A stretch of 64,000 bases of DNA from Octopus bimaculoides (Eukaryota). Location of the stretch: assembly GCF_001194135.2 (NCBI RefSeq), contig NC_068981.1, positions 36,030,759 through 36,094,758 on the forward strand, in the 5' to 3' direction. Positions 21,998 through 63,520 of the stretch are shown piece by piece. Position numbers and translations under genes: made by a program. The notes under the pieces were generated by a model, which searched no databases, was not told the origin of the DNA, and saw nothing but the letters and a program-made list of their open reading frames with translations. The number at the start of each line of letters is the position of its first letter. Within the stretch, counting starts at the first letter, position 1.

Positions 21998-22100
21998 GTA
22001 TTTAATCCAGTGATTCATCTACACTGCCACTCCATTGCTTACATATGTTCTATAGTATTGAGATAAATAAAAAAAATGTTACTTGCAGTTAAGTTGATTA

Positions 22101-22180
22101 TCACCTTACCAAATGTAGTTTTTAACAAATTTTTTTACTCACCTGAAAAATACAAAAGATAAAAGCACAGAATTAGAAAT
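22101..22180 (-). promoter_or_regulatory. Candidate recursive splice site (3'ss fused to 5'ss) with a 33-nt cryptic exon
   Basis: Minus strand: TTCTAAT (branch-like), then TCTGTGCTTTTATCTTTTGTATTTTTCAG|GTGAGT. A second donor TTG|GTAAGG lies 33 nt downstream. All three frames of 22142-22110 contain stops. Confidence 0.45.
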
Positions 22181-23499
22181 TTGAAAAAGAAAACCAACAA
22201 AAAAGAAAGTAATAAAACAAACTATTTAGTGTTAAGATTGTGATTTTCTCTCATCTGTTAGCCTCATCTTTAGAATGTTTATTTTCAATATTTATGTGTA
22301 CACAATCTTTCGATCTTCAGTCATCATAAAGTGTCTTTTTTTTTATGGTAACTAAATGGTTTTAGATTCAATTCAAACTAGGAATGTATTTTAAACCGAG
22401 AATAGCAATTTGTTTATCCACTATGTTATTTGTATATTATTTTCCTTAGTTTACATAATGGTTCCTAGTTTGAATTCATTATGCACATACATATATATGT
22501 ATGTGCATATATGGTATATATATGTTCAAAAATTATATAGAAGCAAAACTAATGGAAAATACACACAGAGAATGTTACTAAATCTTCATCAGTTATCATC
22601 CAAAGAATCAAAGGCATGAAATTGTTATGATCCTTTGGATGATAAGTGATAAGGATTTAGTGATGTTTTATGTGTGTGTGTTCTGTTTATTGTGCTTCTA
22701 TATAATTTTCAAATGCATTGTTTAATGTAATGCCATGCACGTTCTTGTTTTGTAATTATTCAGTACACACACACACACATATATATATATATATCATGTA
22801 TATGTGTGTGTGTGTATATATAGAAAAACGATCTATACAGGTCAACAAATATATGCGTGTTCATTAAAAACCATGTGATATGATGATGGAAGATCAAATA
22901 CATAAGAATATAGTGACAATATAAAGAAAGCTATAAAAGAAGTATTAGACTGAAATAAGTATTATTATTGATAGATATGATTGACTGAAACCATTGATGG
23001 CAGTTCCATAGCATGGTTGCAGTTCAATGAATGAAGCCAGCAAAAGAATATATTCTAAGAATTAAGTTATCAATGCTGAAAATTATAACCTAAGGAATAA
23101 CAAAGAATCATTGTAGATATTAATGTATCTTATAAACTCTTTAATATTTGAGTAAATGGCAAAATAATTATTTTAATTAATCTAGTTCATCATTATTCAG
23201 CTATGGAACTAACTACATCATCATCATCCAAAGAATATCATTGATAATATCAAGTTAATCCTAATTAGAATTTCTGATACTAAGAGAGCCATAAATTTTG
23301 TGAAAGTGAGGGATGTAGTGAAATGAATATAGATCTGGAAACATCACTTTTACTCATTATAGTGGACACAGAATAATGATGGGCAAAGACCACAAAATTG
23401 TTAGAATTATCATGCTAACACATGAACAGACTTTGAAATATCAATAACACAAAACAATATATTTCTAAATGAGAAAATAACTTGGTGGTTTATTGTAAT

Positions 23500-23905: not shown

Positions 23906-25229
23906 CAATTATCATAATTAATTTATGGTATATCATACATTATGATTCCATGTTGATTTTTAAAATGTTTATCAAATTAGCTGCAGAAGAATGTTTAAGA
24001 GGAGAGATAACTGACATGAGCATATAATGTTTAGTGTACAAGTAAGATGTGTGTGGTAAGATGGGGTGTGAAGGTATGTAATGATGAATGTGAAAGACAC
24101 AAACAATTTATCAGTGATGAATCTGATGTGAAATAACCAATGTATATTTCATTTAAAACAAAATGAAAACTGAATCTGAAAATGTTTTAAATATGATCTG
24201 AAAATGTTAACTCTTATTCTGTGTGTTGACTAAACTTAGTAAACAATGACAGTCCAAGCAAATATATGTAAAATATGTAGTCATGATTATGATTCCTTAT
24301 ACTGGGAAGGTTATATATTTTTATGGAGGGATGACTTTAGTCAATTGAATATAAATCTAGAAGCATCTCTGACATTATTTTATTGGACACAGTATAACAA
24401 AATATTATGTTGTCACTTGGTAGGGTTTGAACTAAAAATTCAGAATAACACTCTAAATGCTGTTAGGCATTCTACAAGCTACTTTTTAAAATTTGCAATT
24501 ATATTCAGTATTATTCTATTGAAGCTGATTCATCTGTAGGAAGAATGATAATGTTGGCCCTGAGTAATGTTTGAACATAACTAAATCAATAAACTAAATA
24601 CTATAGAAGAAAATATACAAAGAAAGACTTCCTATTAACCATATCACCAGTGAATGTTATATTAACAAAAAATTTATAGAAGAGGTTGTTTTTATCAGAT
24701 GGATTGCATAATTGCATTGCAGAGCTTAATTCTTCCAACTGACTAGTGAAGTTAATAAAATGTGCATCCTTACTCTTATCTTACTCAATATATGAAGACA
24801 AAAACCTACAACTTTGCCTAAAAGGTCAGACCAGATGGGTTGTATAACATTGACAATATAATACATTAAGTCTTGGAACTACAAGAGAAATCATTTCAGA
24901 ACACAACAAAATCATTTAGCATTAAGGATGATATCTAATATCATTTAAAGTTTTTGAATCAATGTTTTCATAAAATATAATTCATAATGCAATGCAAAAA
25001 TGAAATATACACAACTTGTTTTAGATAAATATAAAGGTCCATACTTGGCTACAAAAGAAAATACGATTAATTACTTGTTCTGTAGCAAGCTTTGTACTAT
25101 ATAAAATATCCAGAAAACCTTCTGATAAAATTAAGCTGGCAGAAAGATAAGTACATAGAGGAAAAAAAGAGAGACAGAAACAAACAAGGAGGAAGAAAAC
25201 TCAGAGGTGGAGGAGGTTGACTACCATGG

Positions 25230-29399: not shown

Positions 29400-29775
29400 A
29401 GTAGATCGTTGGAAGTTGAATCTCATGGTGGCAACAACAAATGACTGAGACTTTTGGTGATTTGCTGTGCTTGAGAAGATATGTCAAGTTTGTAGCTAGT
29501 GCTGGAGACATGTGCCAGTGGCACATACATGTCAGCTGTGTTGGTGAAGCTGGTGACTTATAAAAAGTATTCATGCTGATGATATGTAAAATACATCCAT
29601 GCCAGTGATGCATAAAAGACGCTTGGTACACTCTATGGAGTGATTGGCATTAGGAAGGACGTCCAGCCATAAAAACCAAGCCAAAAGAAACTAGAATCTG
29701 GTGCAGCTCTCCAGCTTACTAGTTCCAGTTAAACCATCTAACCTATGCCAGTATGGAAAATGGATGCTAAATGAT
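29400..29775 (+). mobile_element. RTE 3' UTR / SINE family D copy (old)
   Basis: GGCATTAGGAAGGACGTCCAGCC...CCTATGCCAGTATGGAAAATGGATGCTAAATGATGATT terminus. Confidence 0.7.
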
Positions 29776-30409
29776 GATTATGATGAATGATAAGTAGGAA
29801 TCCATTCAAATAATTAGTTAGAGTAATACGAGTATTTTAACTGTTATATATTTTTATCAATCTTGAAAGGATGGAAAGCAGAAATGACTTCAATAAGTCT
29901 TGAATGCAAAATATATCTAGATAAAACTAGATACTATACAAGATACAATACAAGACAAAAGTAAAGTACTACATCAAACCATGGTTCACAGAGCTGCACT
30001 TTTTAGTGCGGCAACAGCCCAAAATAAAACTACTGGACAATAATGATAATAATAATAATTTAAATAATAATAATGATAAAGATACAAACAATATATGTCT
30101 TTCCCAAAAGAATTAGCGAGGTGAACAAAGTGGAGGTTATCAGGAATTTTAATTTGGTCATCATATCTATTTTGCTGTCTGTTTATACTTATCACAATAA
30201 AAATGGCACCAATGATATGGTACCTTAATGTCAAAGGATTCTTGAAAGAAGGCCAAATCATAAACTGCAACAATTTTCATTCTCAGGAGACATTCTTTAA
30301 CTGATCACATGAGAAACTATACCCCCCCCCCACACATACACACAACACCCACACACACATGCATATAAATATGTGCATACATATGAGTGTGTATACATAC
30401 ACATACATG

Positions 30410-31660
30410 CAGGGGTTGGACAAAATAATGGAAACACCTAGCATCATAGCATCATAATTTTGAAATATCTATAAAATCATCAAAAGCTTGTTTATTTTTA
30501 TGTTTTTTTATTTATTATTAGTGTTGCTTAATATGTTTTGCTAAAACTGCGTTTTTTTTCCAGATATCATTAGAAAAAGGTAATTAAAATTCATTAAATT
30601 GCCAGATCTATCGGACTTTCAAAGAGGTCAAATTGTTTGTACTCATATGGCAGGTGCTAGAGTAACGAAAACAGCTGAAATGTTTGGTGTATCAAGAAAT
30701 GCTGTCTTGAAAGTAATGACAGCCGTTGAGAAAGAGGCAAAAACCTCCTTGTTGAAACAAAACTCTGGAAGAAAACCAAAACTTTCATATAGGGACCATT
30801 GGACTCTTACATGAATTGTTCGCAAGGATCACAAAAGTACAGCTCCCAAAATTACTGCAGAACTTAATGGTCACCTCAAGAACCCAGTTTCCACAAAAAC
30901 TCTTCACCAGGAGCTGCACAAAACCAGATTTCATGGGAGGACTGCAATCAGAAAACCACTACTTTCAAAAACAAACGTTGCAAAGCATTTAGGGTGGAGT
31001 AAAAACCTACAGAGTTGGTCCCCAAAACAGTGGCAGAATGTTATTTTCTCAGACGAATCATCCTTTGCCTTATTTCCGACCACTGGCTGAGTATACGTTT
31101 GAAGACAGCAAAAAGAAGCATTTGACCTACACTGCCTTTTTCCATCACGGAGGAGGATCTGGCGGGAGAGGGGGTCTATATCTTGGAAATCTGCTGGCTC
31201 AACGACAGGATTAATAGTCAAGACTATTTAAGCATTTTATCTTAGCAAATTCATCCTATGGTTGTGGAAGTGTTTCCAGAGGGAAGTGCAATCTTTCAGT
31301 ATGATAATGCATCAATCCACACAGCTAAAGTTGTTACTGAATGGCATGAGAAACATTCTAGTGAAGTTGAGCATTTTATTTGGCCACCACAGTCCTCGGA
31401 TCTCAATATTATTGAACATTTATGGTGCATTTTAGAAAAACAAGTAAAGAGTTGATATCCTCCACCATCATCACTACCAGAACTGGAGACTGTTTTGGCT
31501 GATGAAAGGACAAAAATTCCTTTGGAAACAATTCAAACTTTGTACAAGTCCATACCCCATAGAATTTAAGCTGTAATTACTGCCAAAGGTGGTCCTACCC
31601 CATTTCAAAATAAATTTGCTTGAAATTTTAAGGTGTTTCCATTATTTTGTCAAACCCTTG
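30410..31660 (+). mobile_element. Full-length (1251 bp) inactive Tc1/mariner DD34E transposon
   Basis: 30-bp TIRs CAGGGGTTGGACAAAATAATGGAAACACCT and AGGTGTTTCCATTATTTTGTCAAACCCTTG (2 mismatches). TA on the right; TG on the left (probably a mutated TA). Confidence 0.95.
30599..31605 (+). pseudogene. Tc1-family transposase pseudogene
   Basis: DLSDFQRGQIV...SGRKPKLS (paired-like HTH/GRPR-like), VIFSDES (D1), IFQYDNASIHTA (D2), WPPQSSDLNIIEHLW (E) and AVITAKGGPT C-terminus. Several stops and frameshifts. Confidence 0.92.
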
Positions 31661-31740: not shown

Positions 31741-32076
31741 TTGCCAGTGCCCCTGGACTGGTTCTTGTGCGGGTGGCACATGAGATGCACCATTTTGAGC
31801 GTGGCCGTTGCCAGTACCGCCTGACTGGCTCCTGTAGGATTTTCGAGCGAGATCGTTGCCAGTGCCCCTGGACTGGCTTGTGCGGGTGGCACATAAAAGA
31901 CACCATTTCGAGCATGGCCGTTTTCGTGCGGGTGACACTTAAAAGCACCCACTACACTCTCTGAGTGGTTGGCGTTAGGAAGGGCATCCAGCTGTAGAAA
32001 CTCTGCCAAATCAGACTGGAGCCTGGTGTTGCCATCCGGTTTCACCAGTCCTCAGTCAAATCGTCCAACCCATGCT
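31741..32076 (+). mobile_element. Young SINE family D / RTE 3' UTR copy with internal tandem modules; its end falls in a gap
   Basis: GC- and CpG-rich, with repeated GCCAGTGCCCCTGGACTGG...GTGCGGGTGGCAC units, then GGCGTTAGGAAGGGCATCCAGCTGTAG...CGTCCAACCCATGCT. Confidence 0.85.
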
Positions 32077-32863: not shown

Positions 32864-33574
32864 GTATGTAACTTAAGAATCTGAAATTTTGTAGTTCATG
32901 GTGATACTAAATAATAAAATCTTTTTCCAAAATTGGAAAAAAAGAAAGAAACAAAACCTGGCTGCTTAATAACAGAGTGTATAATTCTTAAAGTTTGTTA
33001 CAACTAATGGTACTATAGTGTCTCGTCATTTCTGCAGGGTGTGTCTACTTTGGAAAAGAAGAGCAGCTGCATCTGATATTAATCCATGCAACTTTGAACA
33101 AATGTTGTGTGTGGCATGGAAGGGGATTTTCCATGTCAGAACATACCACACATACCAGACTATAAACACCACACACACACACACCACTCAGCATTTATAC
33201 TACACATACTAGAGCAGGCACAAATGACATTCCTGAACACATTGCATTTGATCTTGTGCTCACTTATTTGATCATACACCATGCATACCAAAACATTTGC
33301 ACACAGACATACACACTCAATACACACGGAAACATAAATGGCACACACTAAAGCATCCACCATTATCATGCCAAAAATTATATTCTATGCACCAGCACAG
33401 ATAGAACTGGTAAGAATTCTGTCACACTGCTTTAGCACAGACAACACACACACTTACACAAACAGGCAACATCTTTCTCACATGCATGTAAACATAAAAC
33501 ACTGTATCACAAGATCATACATCACATATAAAAAAGCTTAACACATTCCTACATAGAAGTACAATTTACACACA

Positions 33575-33615
<41 letters not shown>

Positions 33616-33654
33616 TCACGAGCGCGCGCGCACACACACACACACACACGTTAT

Positions 33655-34370
33655 TTACTCTTGCTGGCTGCATAACGTCAGTGTGCATGCACGGCAGAGT
33701 GTAAGCGTCCTGAGAGAAAAGTTGGACATAAGAAGCATCAGATGTTGTGTGCAAGAGAGACAACTGTGCTGGTATGGTTATGTGATGCATATATATGAGG
33801 ATAGCCATGTGAAGAAGTTTCACACCCTAATGGGGAGGGAATCTGTAGAAGAGGTACACCTAGGAAGGCATAGGATGTGGTGGTTAAGCACAATCTTTGA
33901 AAGCTGGGCCTCACAGAGGCAATGACAAGCAACTGAGACCTTTGGAGATATGCTGTGTTTGAGAAGACCTAGCAAGCCAAGTGAGATCATAGTCGTGGCC
34001 AATGCCAGTATTGAATAGCTGACCCATTTAAAAGCACACCCCCCCCACTCATTGGGCGATATGCTGTGATCCATGCTGGTGGCATGTAAAAAGCACCATT
34101 TGAGCATGGCTGATACCAGTTCCACATGACTGGCATGTAAAAAACACCATTCAAGTGTGGCTGATGCCAGTGCCACCTGACTGGTATGTAAAAAGTACCC
34201 ACCACACTCTTGGAGAGGTTGGCATTAGGAAGGGCATCCAGCTGTAGAAACCTTGCCAAATCAAATTGGGGCCTGGTGCAGCCTCCCAGCTTACCAATTC
34301 CCAGTCAAGCCATCTACCCTATACCAGCATAGAAAGTGACCCTTAAATGATGATGATGATGATGATGATG
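33655..34370 (+). mobile_element. RTE LINE 3' fragment with 3' UTR and (GAT)n tail
   Basis: LREKLDIRSIRCCVQERQLCWYGYVMH matches the RTE C-terminal RRLxWxGHVxR motif, followed by the family D terminus and AAATGATGATGAT. Confidence 0.88.
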
Positions 34371-56894: not shown

Positions 56895-57048
56895 TGGCTG
56901 TATGGTTAAGGAGCTCATTTTGCGATCATAGGATTTCAGGTTCAGTGTCACTGTGCTGCACTTTGGGTAAGTACATACAAAGTCCCAGGCCAATAATGTA
57001 GTGTGAGTAAATTTGATAGATGGGAACTGTGTGAGAGCCCACCATATA
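56895..57048 (+). mobile_element. SINE family A head; its TA tail is the Tc1 insertion site
   Basis: GGCTGTATGGTTAAGGAG...GGTTCAGTGTCACTGTGCTGCACTTTGGGTAAG...GGGAACTGTGTGAGAGCCCACC, then TATA-CAGGGG. Confidence 0.7.
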
Positions 57049-57995
57049 CAGGGGTTGGACAAAATAATGGAAACATCTAGCACCATAGCATCATAATTTT
57101 GAAATATCTATAAAACCATCAAAAGCTTGTTTATTTTTATGTTTTTCAATTTATCATTAGTGTTGTTTAATATGTTTTGTTAAAACAGCGGTTTCTTTTC
57201 AGATATCATCATAAAAAGGTAATTAAATTCATTAAAATGACAAATCTATCGGATTTTCAAAGAGGTCAAATTATTGGTGCTCATATGGCAGGCACTAGCA
57301 TAATGAAAACAGCTGAAATGTTTGGTGTATCAAGAAGTACTGTCTTGAAAGTAATGACAGCCTTTGAGAAAGAGGCAAAAACCTCCTCGTCAAAATAAAA
57401 CTCCGGAAGAAAACCAAAACTTTCAGATAGGGACTGTGGACTCTTACACAAATAGTTAGAATTTGGAGAGAGCCAAAAGAAGCATTTGACCCAGACTGCT
57501 TTCTACCAACTGTTAAAATTACTGCAGAGCTTAATGACTACCCTGAGAACCTAGTTTCCACAAAAACTCTTCACTGGGAGCTGCACAAAGCCAGATTTCA
57601 AGGGAGTGCTGCAATCAGAAAACCACTTCTTTCAAAAACAAATGCCGTAAAGCTTTTAGAGTGGAGTAAAAACCTCCAGAATTGGTCCCCAGAGCAGTGG
57701 CAGAATGTTATTTTCTCGGACAAGTCATCCTTTACCCTATTTCCACTCACCGGCTGAGTATACATGTAGTGACAGCCAAAAGAAGCATTCGAGCCTTCTT
57801 CTAGCTGTTAAACATGTAGGAGGATCTGTGATGATCTGTGGGGCTATATCTTGGAAATCCACCAGCCCAATGGCAGGATTAATAGTCAAGACTATTTAAG
57901 CATTTTATCTGGTCAAATTCATCCTATAGTTGCAGAACTGTTTCTGGAGGGAAACGCAATCTTTCAGGATGACAATGCACCAATTCACACAACTA
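57049..57995 (+). mobile_element. 3'-truncated copy of the same Tc1 family as 30410-31660
   Basis: TA plus left TIR CAGGGGTTGGACAAAATAATGGAAACA. Peptides MTNLSDFQRGQIIG, GGSVMICGAISW and IFQDDNAPIHT. Breaks off after D2; no right TIR. Confidence 0.93.
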
Positions 57996-58358
57996 AATAC
58001 ACATGTATACCGCCAAAGGGCTTGATCACTTGTCAATGTCTCCATGAGGTCCAATGCTTGAATGGTCCTTTTTACGAGCCACTGGGATGGATGCCAGTCA
58101 GATGGCACTGGCATTGGCCATGACTATTATTTCACTTGGTTCAACAGGTTTTCGATTATATGTATTCAGTCAGTAGTTAGCCCTTTGAGAGGATGCCACT
58201 TTTAACCATTTTTGAATAAGACAATCACACAACCACAACTTCAACCACCGTTATAACTGGAATTTTGGTGGCACACCGTTTTTGAGCACTCAGAACACAT
58301 ACCTATTCATTTGAGTCATCCTGACAAAAACTCTTCATATCCTCTCTCTATATGTATT

Positions 58359-62344: not shown

Positions 62345-62565
62345 GTTTGTGTGTCTGTGTTTGTCCCCCCAACATCGCTTGACAACCGATGCTGGTGTGT
62401 TTATGTCCCCGTAACTTTGCGGTTCGGCAAAAGAGACCGATAGAATAAGTACTAGGCTTCTAAAGAATAAGTCCTGGGGTCGATTTGCTCGACTAAAGGC
62501 GGTGCTCCAGCATGGCCGCAGTTAAAAGACTGAAACAAGTAAAAGAGTAAAAGAGTAAAAGAGTA
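62345..62565 (+). mobile_element. Young SINE family B copy with (GTAAAAGA)n tail
   Basis: CpG-rich, GCTTGACAACCGATGCTGG...GCGGTTCGGCAAAAGAGACCGATAGAATAAGTAC...GGCGGTGCTCCAGCATGGCCGCAG, tail repeated about 3 times. Confidence 0.88.
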
Positions 62566-62599: not shown

Positions 62600-63520
62600 G
62601 GTATACAAAAGCATGTGGTTTGATGTATAAAAACAAAATAGAATGAAAATCTATGAAATACTTGTATTATATGGTTAAAGAATATATTTAAATAATGTTA
62701 GGAAAATATTATAAAATTTTGTGTGTAGTGACATTGTTTTTGGAGAAATAACTGGTTTCGTATTTTCTTTTCAAATTTCTCAAATTTCTTTATTGATATT
62801 GTGTCATCTCTTCGCTATGGTGTGATATAGGAGAGTTCCAAACAGGGGGAAGTAATCAGGGATTTTTTCGGTATAAGGAAGATAATCAAAAATGTTGGGA
62901 ATGATTGGGTTTTATAAATTTAACATGATTCGGTTTTGATTGAATAAAATGTTAGAAGTGGTTAAGTTTTGCTTTATATTTTTCAATGAGGTAAGTTTCC
63001 TTATTTAAAAATGCTAGAAATGATTAAGTTTTAGCTTATATTTTTCAATGAGGTAGGTTTTTTTTATTTAATCTAACTTGTGTTGGTGTTCCAATGGCAT
63101 ATTGATAAAATGGAAAGATTACAAATTGTGGTAGCAGTTGCTTTGCACATCTCTCAATGTGTTAGTTAGAAGGTATCATTCTGTATTCTGGGAATGCAAT
63201 CTGCTGTCGGTGCAGAGTGCATCTACATCTGAGTGATAATCCCGCAGACCCTATGTAGTTTTGGTGGCAGCCTGAGCATCTTATAATGTAAATCAGGTTT
63301 TCTGAGGCACAAGTAAAATCAGATTTGATTTTGAATTTTTGTCCCTCTTTAAAAAGGAATTCTGATCCTTCAAGAAAGTTTGGACATGTTGCACAATTTG
63401 CTTCTTTGATGTATCTAGTTAAAAATGTGTGTTTCACATTTTTACTGGAAGTATGCTACTTTCATTTCTGTTTGGTGCATTTGTTTTTCTTTTTGTTTTT
63501 CTCTACTGGAAATGACCTAT
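62600..63520 (-). mobile_element. Penelope-like element 3' fragment: GIY-YIG endonuclease remnant and 3' terminal region
   Basis: ORF 63162-63437 NCATCPNF...FTCASENLIYIIRCSGCHQNYIG...LRCRCTLHRQQI has the upstream CxxC, the xIY-YIG core and CxxC. It continues after a frameshift as HIERCAK...FVIFPFY...YLIEKYK.KLN. Confidence 0.9.
62743..62781 (-). ncRNA. Minimal type I hammerhead ribozyme candidate with a U3-A8 core
   Basis: Minus strand: GAGAAAT-TTGAAAA-G-AAAATA-C-GAAA-CCAG-T-T/ATTTCTC. Perfect 7-bp stem I, 1-bp G-C stem II with a hexaloop, near-palindromic helix III (ACCAGT), GUU triplet. Confidence 0.6.

What the first reader, a model, noticed from the sequence alone, without database searches (positions are those of the whole stretch)
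22101..22180. Recursive-splice (ratchet) site with a 33-nt poison RS-exon-like architecture
Seen on the minus strand, in unique sequence: branch-like TTCTAAT about 30 nt upstream, an uninterrupted pyrimidine tract, CAG, and then immediately a consensus donor GTGAGT. A second donor (TTG|GTAAGG) lies 33 nt on, and the intervening segment has stops in all frames. Established: this is the layout of Drosophila ratchet points and vertebrate RS-exons in very long introns. Inference: it could indicate recursive splicing in a mollusc, which I do not know to be described. Caveat: it needs a minus-strand transcript, while my best coding exon candidates are on the plus strand only about 110 bp away. Either genes overlap or one call is chance.
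Basis: partly seen in the sequence, partly recalled or inferred. Interest (0 to 1): 0.7.

Follow-up and report, generated by a model that had tools for sequence, protein, structure and literature searches.

The report
Probable chance recursive-splice-site look-alike
The minus strand at 22143/22142 really does carry an acceptor-like site directly joined to a consensus donor, but this is about as common as chance predicts in such AT-rich DNA, and no gene, exon or transcript can be tied to it, so it is most likely a look-alike and not a working recursive splice site.

Summary
The sequence is as described, with one error. On the minus strand there is TTCTAAT (branch A at 22173), a pyrimidine-rich tract, CAG (22145-22143) joined directly to GTGAGT (22142-22137), and a second donor, TTG|GTAAGG, 33 nt further on. 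The 33-nt segment has stops in all frames. The pyrimidine tract is not uninterrupted: 3 of its last 20 bases are purines.

The motif is not rare. The 12-nt core TTNYAG|GTRAGT appears in 19 of 100 shuffles. Requiring a pyrimidine-rich tract gives about 1-4% per 64-kb window, and a weight-matrix score gives 5-12%. That implies hundreds to thousands of chance sites in a 2-3 Gb genome. The extra features are also cheap, and the donor GTGAGTAA itself closes two of the three frames.

There were no Rfam or tRNA hits and no strand asymmetry. Transcription and conservation could not be tested with these tools.

Verdict: probably a chance juxtaposition in intergenic or deep non-coding DNA (about 0.8). 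A genuine ratchet point in a very long intron of a minus-strand gene remains possible (about 0.1). If genuine, it would be the first reported in a mollusc.

The parts
22172..22178 (-). Branch-point-like TTCTAAT, with the putative branch A at 22173, 30 nt upstream of the AG
   Evidence: Read directly. A YTNAY match in this position range occurs at 40% of random positions, and CTAAY at 4%.
22146..22165 (-). Pyrimidine-rich tract CTTTTATCTTTTGTATTTTT: 85% pyrimidine, interrupted by A, G and A. T at -5 and -6.
   Evidence: It is part of a longer T-rich stretch (75% pyrimidine over 85 nt).
22143..22145 (-). Acceptor-like CAG
22137..22142 (-). Consensus donor-like GTGAGT directly abutting the AG (the putative ratchet-point donor)
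22110..22142 (-). 33-nt putative RS-exon GTGAGTAAAAAAATTTGTTAAAAACTACATTTG, with stops in all three frames
   Evidence: Frames 2 and 3 are closed by GTGAGTAA itself.
22104..22109 (-). Second donor-like site, TTG|GTAAGG, 33 nt after the junction
22037..22042 (-). Third donor-like site, TAT|GTAAGC, 100 nt after the junction (an alternative end for a cryptic exon)

Best explanation
This is a chance juxtaposition of an acceptor-like and a donor-like motif in non-coding, AT-rich DNA. The DNA is probably intergenic or otherwise not transcribed from the minus strand. In sequence that is about 67% A+T, T-rich runs ending in YAG are frequent (61 in this window). The hexamer GTRAGT is common enough that the two abut roughly once per 10-100 windows of this size, so the site does nothing. 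What is shown: the motif, its expected frequency, and the absence of any detectable exon or known RNA nearby. What is inferred: that the minus strand is not part of a long intron.
For: - The core motif is expected by chance: 0.22 per window, and 19 of 100 shuffles have at least one.
- With a pyrimidine-rich tract the expectation is 0.007-0.037 per window. By weight-matrix score, 5-12.5% of simulated windows do as well.
- These rates agree with published background rates of 0.07-0.12 ratchet-type sites per 100 kb on the antisense strand of large introns in 13 animals (PMC2773006). Scaled to a 2-3 Gb genome, that is hundreds to thousands of such sites.
- The window holds 61 acceptor-like sites and 182 GTRAG.
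- The ancillary features are common or follow from the donor itself.
- No ORF segment of either strand matched any of 5.8 billion proteins.
- There were no Rfam families and no tRNAs.
- Poly(A)-signal and U1-site counts show no strand bias that would mark a transcribed strand.
- Recognisable content is decayed transposons, microsatellites and assembly gaps.
- In an annotated octopus genome, genes cover only about 14% of the sequence and introns average 5.4 kb (PMC6279123). An exon-free 64 kb is therefore more likely intergenic than intronic.
Against: - It is clearly the best of the 285 AGGT sites in the window (10.2 bits against 6.6 for the next).
- It meets the fly-specific TT at -5/-6 rule (99.5% of fly ratchet points; bioRxiv 10.1101/006163).
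- It has a donor at a plausible cryptic-exon distance.
- In every invertebrate tested (sea urchin and four insects), such sites are 4-22 times enriched on the sense strand of introns over 50 kb. If this window is such an intron, chance becomes the less likely explanation.
- Absence of exons is exactly what a very long intron would show.
- Short exons (under about 35 aa), UTR exons and non-coding exons would have escaped my searches.
Confidence: 0.8

Rival explanations
1. It is a genuine recursive splice site (ratchet point) in a very long intron (over 64 kb) of a minus-strand gene whose exons lie outside the window or were too short to detect. The proposed mechanism, by analogy with flies, has four steps:
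1. The 33-nt (or 100-nt) cryptic exon is defined by the acceptor at 22143 and the donor at 22109 (or 22042).
2. The upstream exon is spliced to 22142, which regenerates a donor (exon|GTGAGT).
3. That regenerated donor outcompetes the downstream donor.
4. The cryptic exon is removed with the rest of the intron. If it were included, its stop codons would make the mRNA a target for nonsense-mediated decay.
For: - The sequence layout matches: AG|GTGAGT, TT at -5/-6, 85% pyrimidine over 20 nt, a branch-like CTAAT at -30, and donors at +33 and +100.
- It is the top-ranked AGGT in the window.
- Fly cryptic RS-exons are short (about 50 nt), poorly conserved and out of frame (PMC8605326).
- Ratchet-type motifs are enriched 4-22 times in large introns of sea urchin and insects (PMC2773006). 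The mechanism is therefore probably old and could exist in molluscs.
- The exon-free 64 kb is compatible with a giant intron.
Against: - No minus-strand gene, exon or transcript could be shown.
- The prior for lying in a sense-strand intron over 64 kb is a few percent (gene and intron statistics).
- The motif frequency is within chance.
- A 33-nt exon is short for exon definition (my own knowledge).
- The pyrimidine tract is interrupted.
- Conservation and RNA evidence, which define the class, were not testable.
- A rough Bayes estimate combines a likelihood ratio of 3-5 with a prior of 3-5%. That gives about 0.1.
Confidence: 0.1
2. It is an ordinary or cryptic acceptor of an unannotated minus-strand non-coding or UTR exon (33 or 100 nt, or longer). 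Alternatively it is a pseudoexon used at noise level. In either case the GTGAGT at the exon start would be incidental.
For: - An acceptor-like site of reasonable strength is followed by donors at +33 and +100.
- Stops in all frames fit a non-coding exon.
- Pseudoexons of this kind are well documented in long genes (PMC7175933, listed).
Against: - There is no evidence of any transcript.
- Nothing distinguishes this acceptor from the other 60 acceptor-like sites in the window.
- A consensus donor at the first base of an exon would tend to remove it.
Confidence: 0.06

Closest known systems
Drosophila intronic ratchet points (Ubx, kuz, Bx; Duff et al. 2015; Joseph et al. 2018, 2021; Pai et al. 2018)
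   Same: - Acceptor and donor are juxtaposed around AG|GT.
- T at -5 and -6.
- The donor is GTRAGT.
- A short out-of-frame cryptic exon is bounded by a second donor.
   Different: - Fly sites are defined by their position in the sense strand of long introns, by RNA intermediates, and by strong conservation. None of these is shown here.
- The tract here is interrupted.
- The candidate cryptic exon (33 nt) is shorter than the typical length of about 50 nt.
Vertebrate RS-exons (Sibley et al. 2015; Blazquez et al. 2018)
   Same: - A YAG|GT site is followed by a competing donor.
- The intervening segment carries premature stops, so it would act as a poison exon if included.
   Different: - Vertebrate cases sit in very long, mostly brain-expressed genes and are supported by saw-tooth coverage and junction reads.
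- Here no host gene is known.
- Two of the three 'poison' frames follow from the donor consensus itself.
Decoy splice sites and pseudoexons in long non-coding DNA
   Same: - Good matches to splice consensus arise by chance in AT-rich sequence.
- They are not used, or are used only at noise level.
- The frequency here matches the published antisense-strand background (0.07-0.12 per 100 kb, PMC2773006).
   Different: This is a default class and not a family. It makes no positive prediction beyond the absence of transcripts and of conservation.

Membership tests
Intronic ratchet point (fly type) | Juxtaposed acceptor|donor: pyrimidine-rich tract, YAG|GTRAGT | tested here: met
   CAG|GTGAGT with 85% pyrimidine over 20 nt. 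Best of 285 AGGT sites. The tract is interrupted, and the strict Y8 pattern needs 2 mismatches.
Intronic ratchet point (fly type) | TT at positions -5 and -6 (99.5% of fly sites) | tested here: met
   The sequence is ...TATTTTTCAG|GT. The rule is from bioRxiv 10.1101/006163.
Intronic ratchet point (fly type) | Lies on the sense strand inside a long intron of an expressed gene | tested here: inconclusive
   No exon of any gene was detectable on either strand in the 64 kb. No look-up of window ORFs returned an annotated contig. There is no strand bias in poly(A)-signal or U1 motifs. This fits either a giant intron or intergenic DNA.
Intronic ratchet point (fly type) | Cryptic RS-exon with a downstream donor that is weaker than the regenerated ratchet-point donor | tested here: inconclusive
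   Donors are present at +33 (TTG|GTAAGG) and +100 (TAT|GTAAGC). Their strength relative to the regenerated donor cannot be scored without knowing the upstream exon's last bases.
Intronic ratchet point (fly type) | AG|GT core much more conserved than other intronic AGGT | not testable with these tools
   No cephalopod or other eukaryotic genome collection is available. An exact scan of metagenome contigs found nothing.
Intronic ratchet point (fly type) | RNA intermediates: junction reads into the site, lariats from it, saw-tooth coverage | not testable with these tools
   No RNA-seq data are accessible.
Vertebrate RS-exon | The RS-exon carries premature stop codons, so inclusion gives an NMD target | tested here: met
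   There are stops in all three frames. TGA and TAA come from GTGAGTAA itself, and 8% of random 33-mers here have stops in all frames.
Vertebrate RS-exon | Host is a very long gene with the site deep in a long (often first) intron | tested here: inconclusive
   No host gene was identified.

The most novel reading that the evidence does not exclude
The site is a working recursive splice site in a giant intron (over 64 kb) of an unannotated or out-of-window minus-strand octopod gene. It would be the first ratchet point reported in a mollusc or any lophotrochozoan. It would use the same TT-N-CAG|GTRAGT grammar and short poison cryptic exon as flies. That would imply the mechanism dates back to early bilaterians.
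Probability: 0.1. Interest if true: 0.55.

Novelty: not a real feature. Interest (0 to 1): 0.15.

Why it matters
If real, it would extend recursive splicing to a third major animal lineage. Cephalopods have large genomes, long neural genes and unusual RNA processing, so this would give a concrete site to test. That would still be an expected extension: motif enrichment is already reported in insects and sea urchin, and usage is shown in flies and vertebrates. As it stands, the finding mainly shows that single splice-motif matches in AT-rich genomes carry little weight without strand, transcript or conservation evidence.

Tried and rejected
1. Gene context by homology. I concatenated stop-to-stop ORF segments of both strands. 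Filters were at least 28-32 aa, not low-complexity, outside obvious transposon relics, and GC at least 0.355 outside 19.7-24.9 kb. Three searches against 5.8 billion proteins gave no hit at E <= 1e-3. Caveats: exons under about 35 aa, AT-rich exons and non-coding exons would be missed, and I ran no positive control for concatenated queries.
2. Contig look-ups with window ORFs 22410-22619 (+) and 24246-24539 (+): not on record. No annotation and no other assemblies could be reached.
3. Exact scan of metagenome contigs for the 33-nt core: nothing.
4. Rfam at gathering thresholds and a tRNA scan: nothing, so no intronic RNA gene marks a transcribed strand.
5. Strand cues: AATAAA 99 vs 90, ATTAAA 53 vs 36, GGTRAG 22 vs 14 (+ vs -), and base skews. 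These are contradictory and weak.
6. Transposon origin. I asked whether the T-rich tract is the antisense of an A-rich retroposon tail. There are no other copies of 21.65-22.75 kb in the window, and the nearest AATAAA on the plus strand is about 77 nt from the A-rich run. This is unsupported, and it cannot be tested at genome scale here.
Pfam on ten transposon-like ORFs confirmed only Tc1/mariner pieces.
8. I treat it as chance.

Full report
**What is in the sequence.** The minus strand of 22101-22180 reads ...ATTTCTAATTCTGTGCTTTTATCTTTTGTATTTTTCAG|GTGAGTAAAAAAATTTGTTAAAAACTACATTTG|GTAAGGTGA....
- The coordinates are TTCTAAT 22178-22172 (branch-like A at 22173, 30 nt before the AG), CAG 22145-22143 and GTGAGT 22142-22137.
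- The second donor-like site has its GT at 22109-22108, which defines a 33-nt segment, 22142-22110.
- All three frames of that segment contain stops.
- A third donor-like site, TAT|GTAAGC, lies 100 nt after the junction.
- One detail is wrong. The pyrimidine tract is not uninterrupted: the last 20 nt are 85% pyrimidine with three purines, the last 30 nt are 77%, and the longest pure run next to the AG is 6 nt.
- The region has no other copy in the window, so it is 'unique' at that scale only.

**Is it more than chance?** Only marginally.
- AGGTRAGT occurs four times on the two strands, about as composition predicts. Only this copy has a good upstream tract.
- The fly-type core TTNYAG|GTRAGT occurs once against 0.22 expected, and 19 of 100 dinucleotide-preserving shuffles contain at least one.
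- Requiring YAG, at least 80% pyrimidine over 20 nt and GTRAGT gives 0.007-0.03 expected per window in Markov simulations, and 0.037 by a product estimate.
- I also used a juxtaposed acceptor+donor weight matrix built from my own approximate metazoan frequencies, not trained on this species. With it the site is the best of 285 AGGT (10.2 bits; the next is 6.6). A site at least as good appears in 5% (order-3) to 12.5% (order-5) of simulated windows.
- The strict Y8NYAG|GTRAGT pattern is matched only with two mismatches.
- These figures agree with published background rates. Shepard et al. 2009 (PMC2773006, Table 2) found 0.07-0.12 ratchet-type sites per 100 kb on the antisense strand of introns over 50 kb in 13 animals.
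- In a genome of 2-3 Gb, this means hundreds to thousands of chance sites.

**The supporting features add little.**
- A YTNAY branch match at -18 to -40 occurs at 40% of random positions in this window.
- A GTRAG 20-100 nt downstream occurs at 11%.
- Stops in all frames of a 33-mer occur at 8%. Here frames 2 and 3 are closed by the donor GTGAGTAA itself (TGA, TAA), so the 'poison' character is largely a by-product of the donor consensus.

**Surroundings and gene context.**
- The window is 31% G+C and full of TA/CA/GA microsatellites. It has eight assembly gaps.
- It carries decayed mobile elements. Two Tc1/mariner relics were confirmed by Pfam. There are also SINE-like and LINE-tail-like repeats.
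- This fits a large AT-rich metazoan genome such as an octopod's, but I could not verify the species.
- To find exons I concatenated all non-repeat, non-low-complexity stop-to-stop ORF segments of both strands and searched them against 5.8 billion proteins in three queries. Together they covered the whole window. None gave a hit at E <= 1e-3.
- Two window ORFs near the site are not on record in the assembly index.
- Rfam and tRNA scans were empty.
- Poly(A)-signal and U1-site counts show no coherent strand bias.
It has no homology support.
- The window therefore contains no detectable coding exon on either strand. It is either intergenic or lies deep inside an intron longer than 64 kb.
- Caveats: exons under about 35 aa, AT-rich exons and non-coding exons would escape this test. 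I could not run a positive control for the concatenated-query approach.

**What recursive sites require.**
- Fly ratchet points are juxtaposed acceptor|donor sites with TT at -5/-6 in 99.5% of cases. They are far more conserved than other AG|GT in the same introns. They are supported by junction reads, lariats and saw-tooth coverage (bioRxiv 10.1101/006163; PMC6110457).
- They work through a short (about 50 nt), poorly conserved, out-of-frame cryptic exon. Its donor loses to the regenerated ratchet-point donor (PMC8605326).
- Vertebrate RS-exons follow the same logic, with stop-containing exons (PMC5126111).
- The sequence-level criteria are met here: AG|GT, TT at -5/-6 and a downstream donor.
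- The contextual criterion, a sense-strand position in a long intron, is undecided.
- Conservation and RNA intermediates, the criteria that actually define the class, cannot be tested with the tools available. There is no eukaryotic genome or RNA-seq collection, and the metagenome scan was empty.

**Weighing the explanations.**
- If the window were a large minus-strand intron, and if octopus behaved like the invertebrates in Shepard et al., the site would more likely be real than not. In those species, sense-strand density is 0.5-2.2 per 100 kb against about 0.1 background.
- The prior for that context is small. In O. minor, genes average 23.6 kb. With 30,010 genes in 5.09 Gb, they cover about 14% of the genome, and introns average 5.4 kb (PMC6279123). 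An exon-free 64 kb is therefore mostly intergenic, and only half of any intronic cases would be minus-sense.
- A prior of 3-5% and a likelihood ratio of 3-5 give about 0.1 for a genuine recursive site.
- An unannotated non-coding exon or a noise-level pseudoexon takes about 0.06.
- A functionless chance juxtaposition takes about 0.8.

**Novelty.** No paper in the searchable library links recursive splicing with molluscs, octopus, cephalopods or lophotrochozoans. The single co-occurrence was in an unrelated reference list. A confirmed site would therefore be a new member of a known kind. On present evidence I classify the finding as probably not a real feature and score it low. The decisive checks are simple: annotation strand, stranded RNA-seq junctions, and octopod alignments.

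Noticed in passing
window 22529-22709: A 181-nt near-perfect palindrome. As RNA, 22515-22725 folds into a single long hairpin (-89.4 kcal/mol, z = -12.8 against shuffles). It lies about 390 nt upstream of the site on the minus strand and is not repeated elsewhere in the window. It may be a foldback or MITE-like element, or a double-stranded RNA source.
   Followed up: partly
window 30407-31620 and 57046-58120 (+): Two decayed Tc1/mariner transposon copies, 85-90% identical to each other. Pfam gives HTH_Tnp_Tc3_2 (E 5.9e-10) and DDE_3 (E 1e-12). Their reading frames are broken.
   Followed up: partly
window 3280-3373, 11920-12013, 62366-62459; 29636-29726, 31961-32051, 34211-34301; 9590-9743 vs 31923-32076: Two short interspersed repeat families (65-92% identity between copies), in both orientations. 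They are probably SINE-like elements. They give the recurring 'FLQLDALPNANHSE'-type pseudo-ORFs.
   Followed up: no
window 7155-7692 (-) and 33557-33983 (+): Inverted copies (about 78% identical) of an element with a 'GRGRPRKTW'-type ORF. From memory this resembles the C-terminal tail of a LINE reverse-transcriptase ORF. Pfam gave no hit at E <= 0.01.
   Followed up: partly
window 8105-8407 and 8726-9062: A large foldback: three collinear inverted-repeat pairs, 87-91% complementary, spanning about 950 nt.
   Followed up: no
window 1095-1294 and 1402-1601; N runs at 1295, 6403, 9900, 32077, 36611, 48369, 50019, 58407: There are eight assembly gaps (2308 N), most of them flanked by TA or TG microsatellites. 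The 200 nt on either side of the first gap are 100% identical, which is probably an assembly artefact.
   Followed up: partly
window 63162-63437 (-): A 91-aa ORF with a Cys-rich 'IYIIRCSGCHQNYIG' stretch. From memory this resembles the GIY-YIG domain of Penelope-like elements. Pfam found nothing at E <= 0.01, so this is unconfirmed.
   Followed up: partly
window 52510 (-) and 40525 (-): These are the next-best minus-strand acceptor|donor juxtapositions (gttag|GTGAGA and ctcag|GTGACT). Both are much weaker than the site at 22143. Three of the top four AGGT scores are on the minus strand, which is not significant.
   Followed up: no
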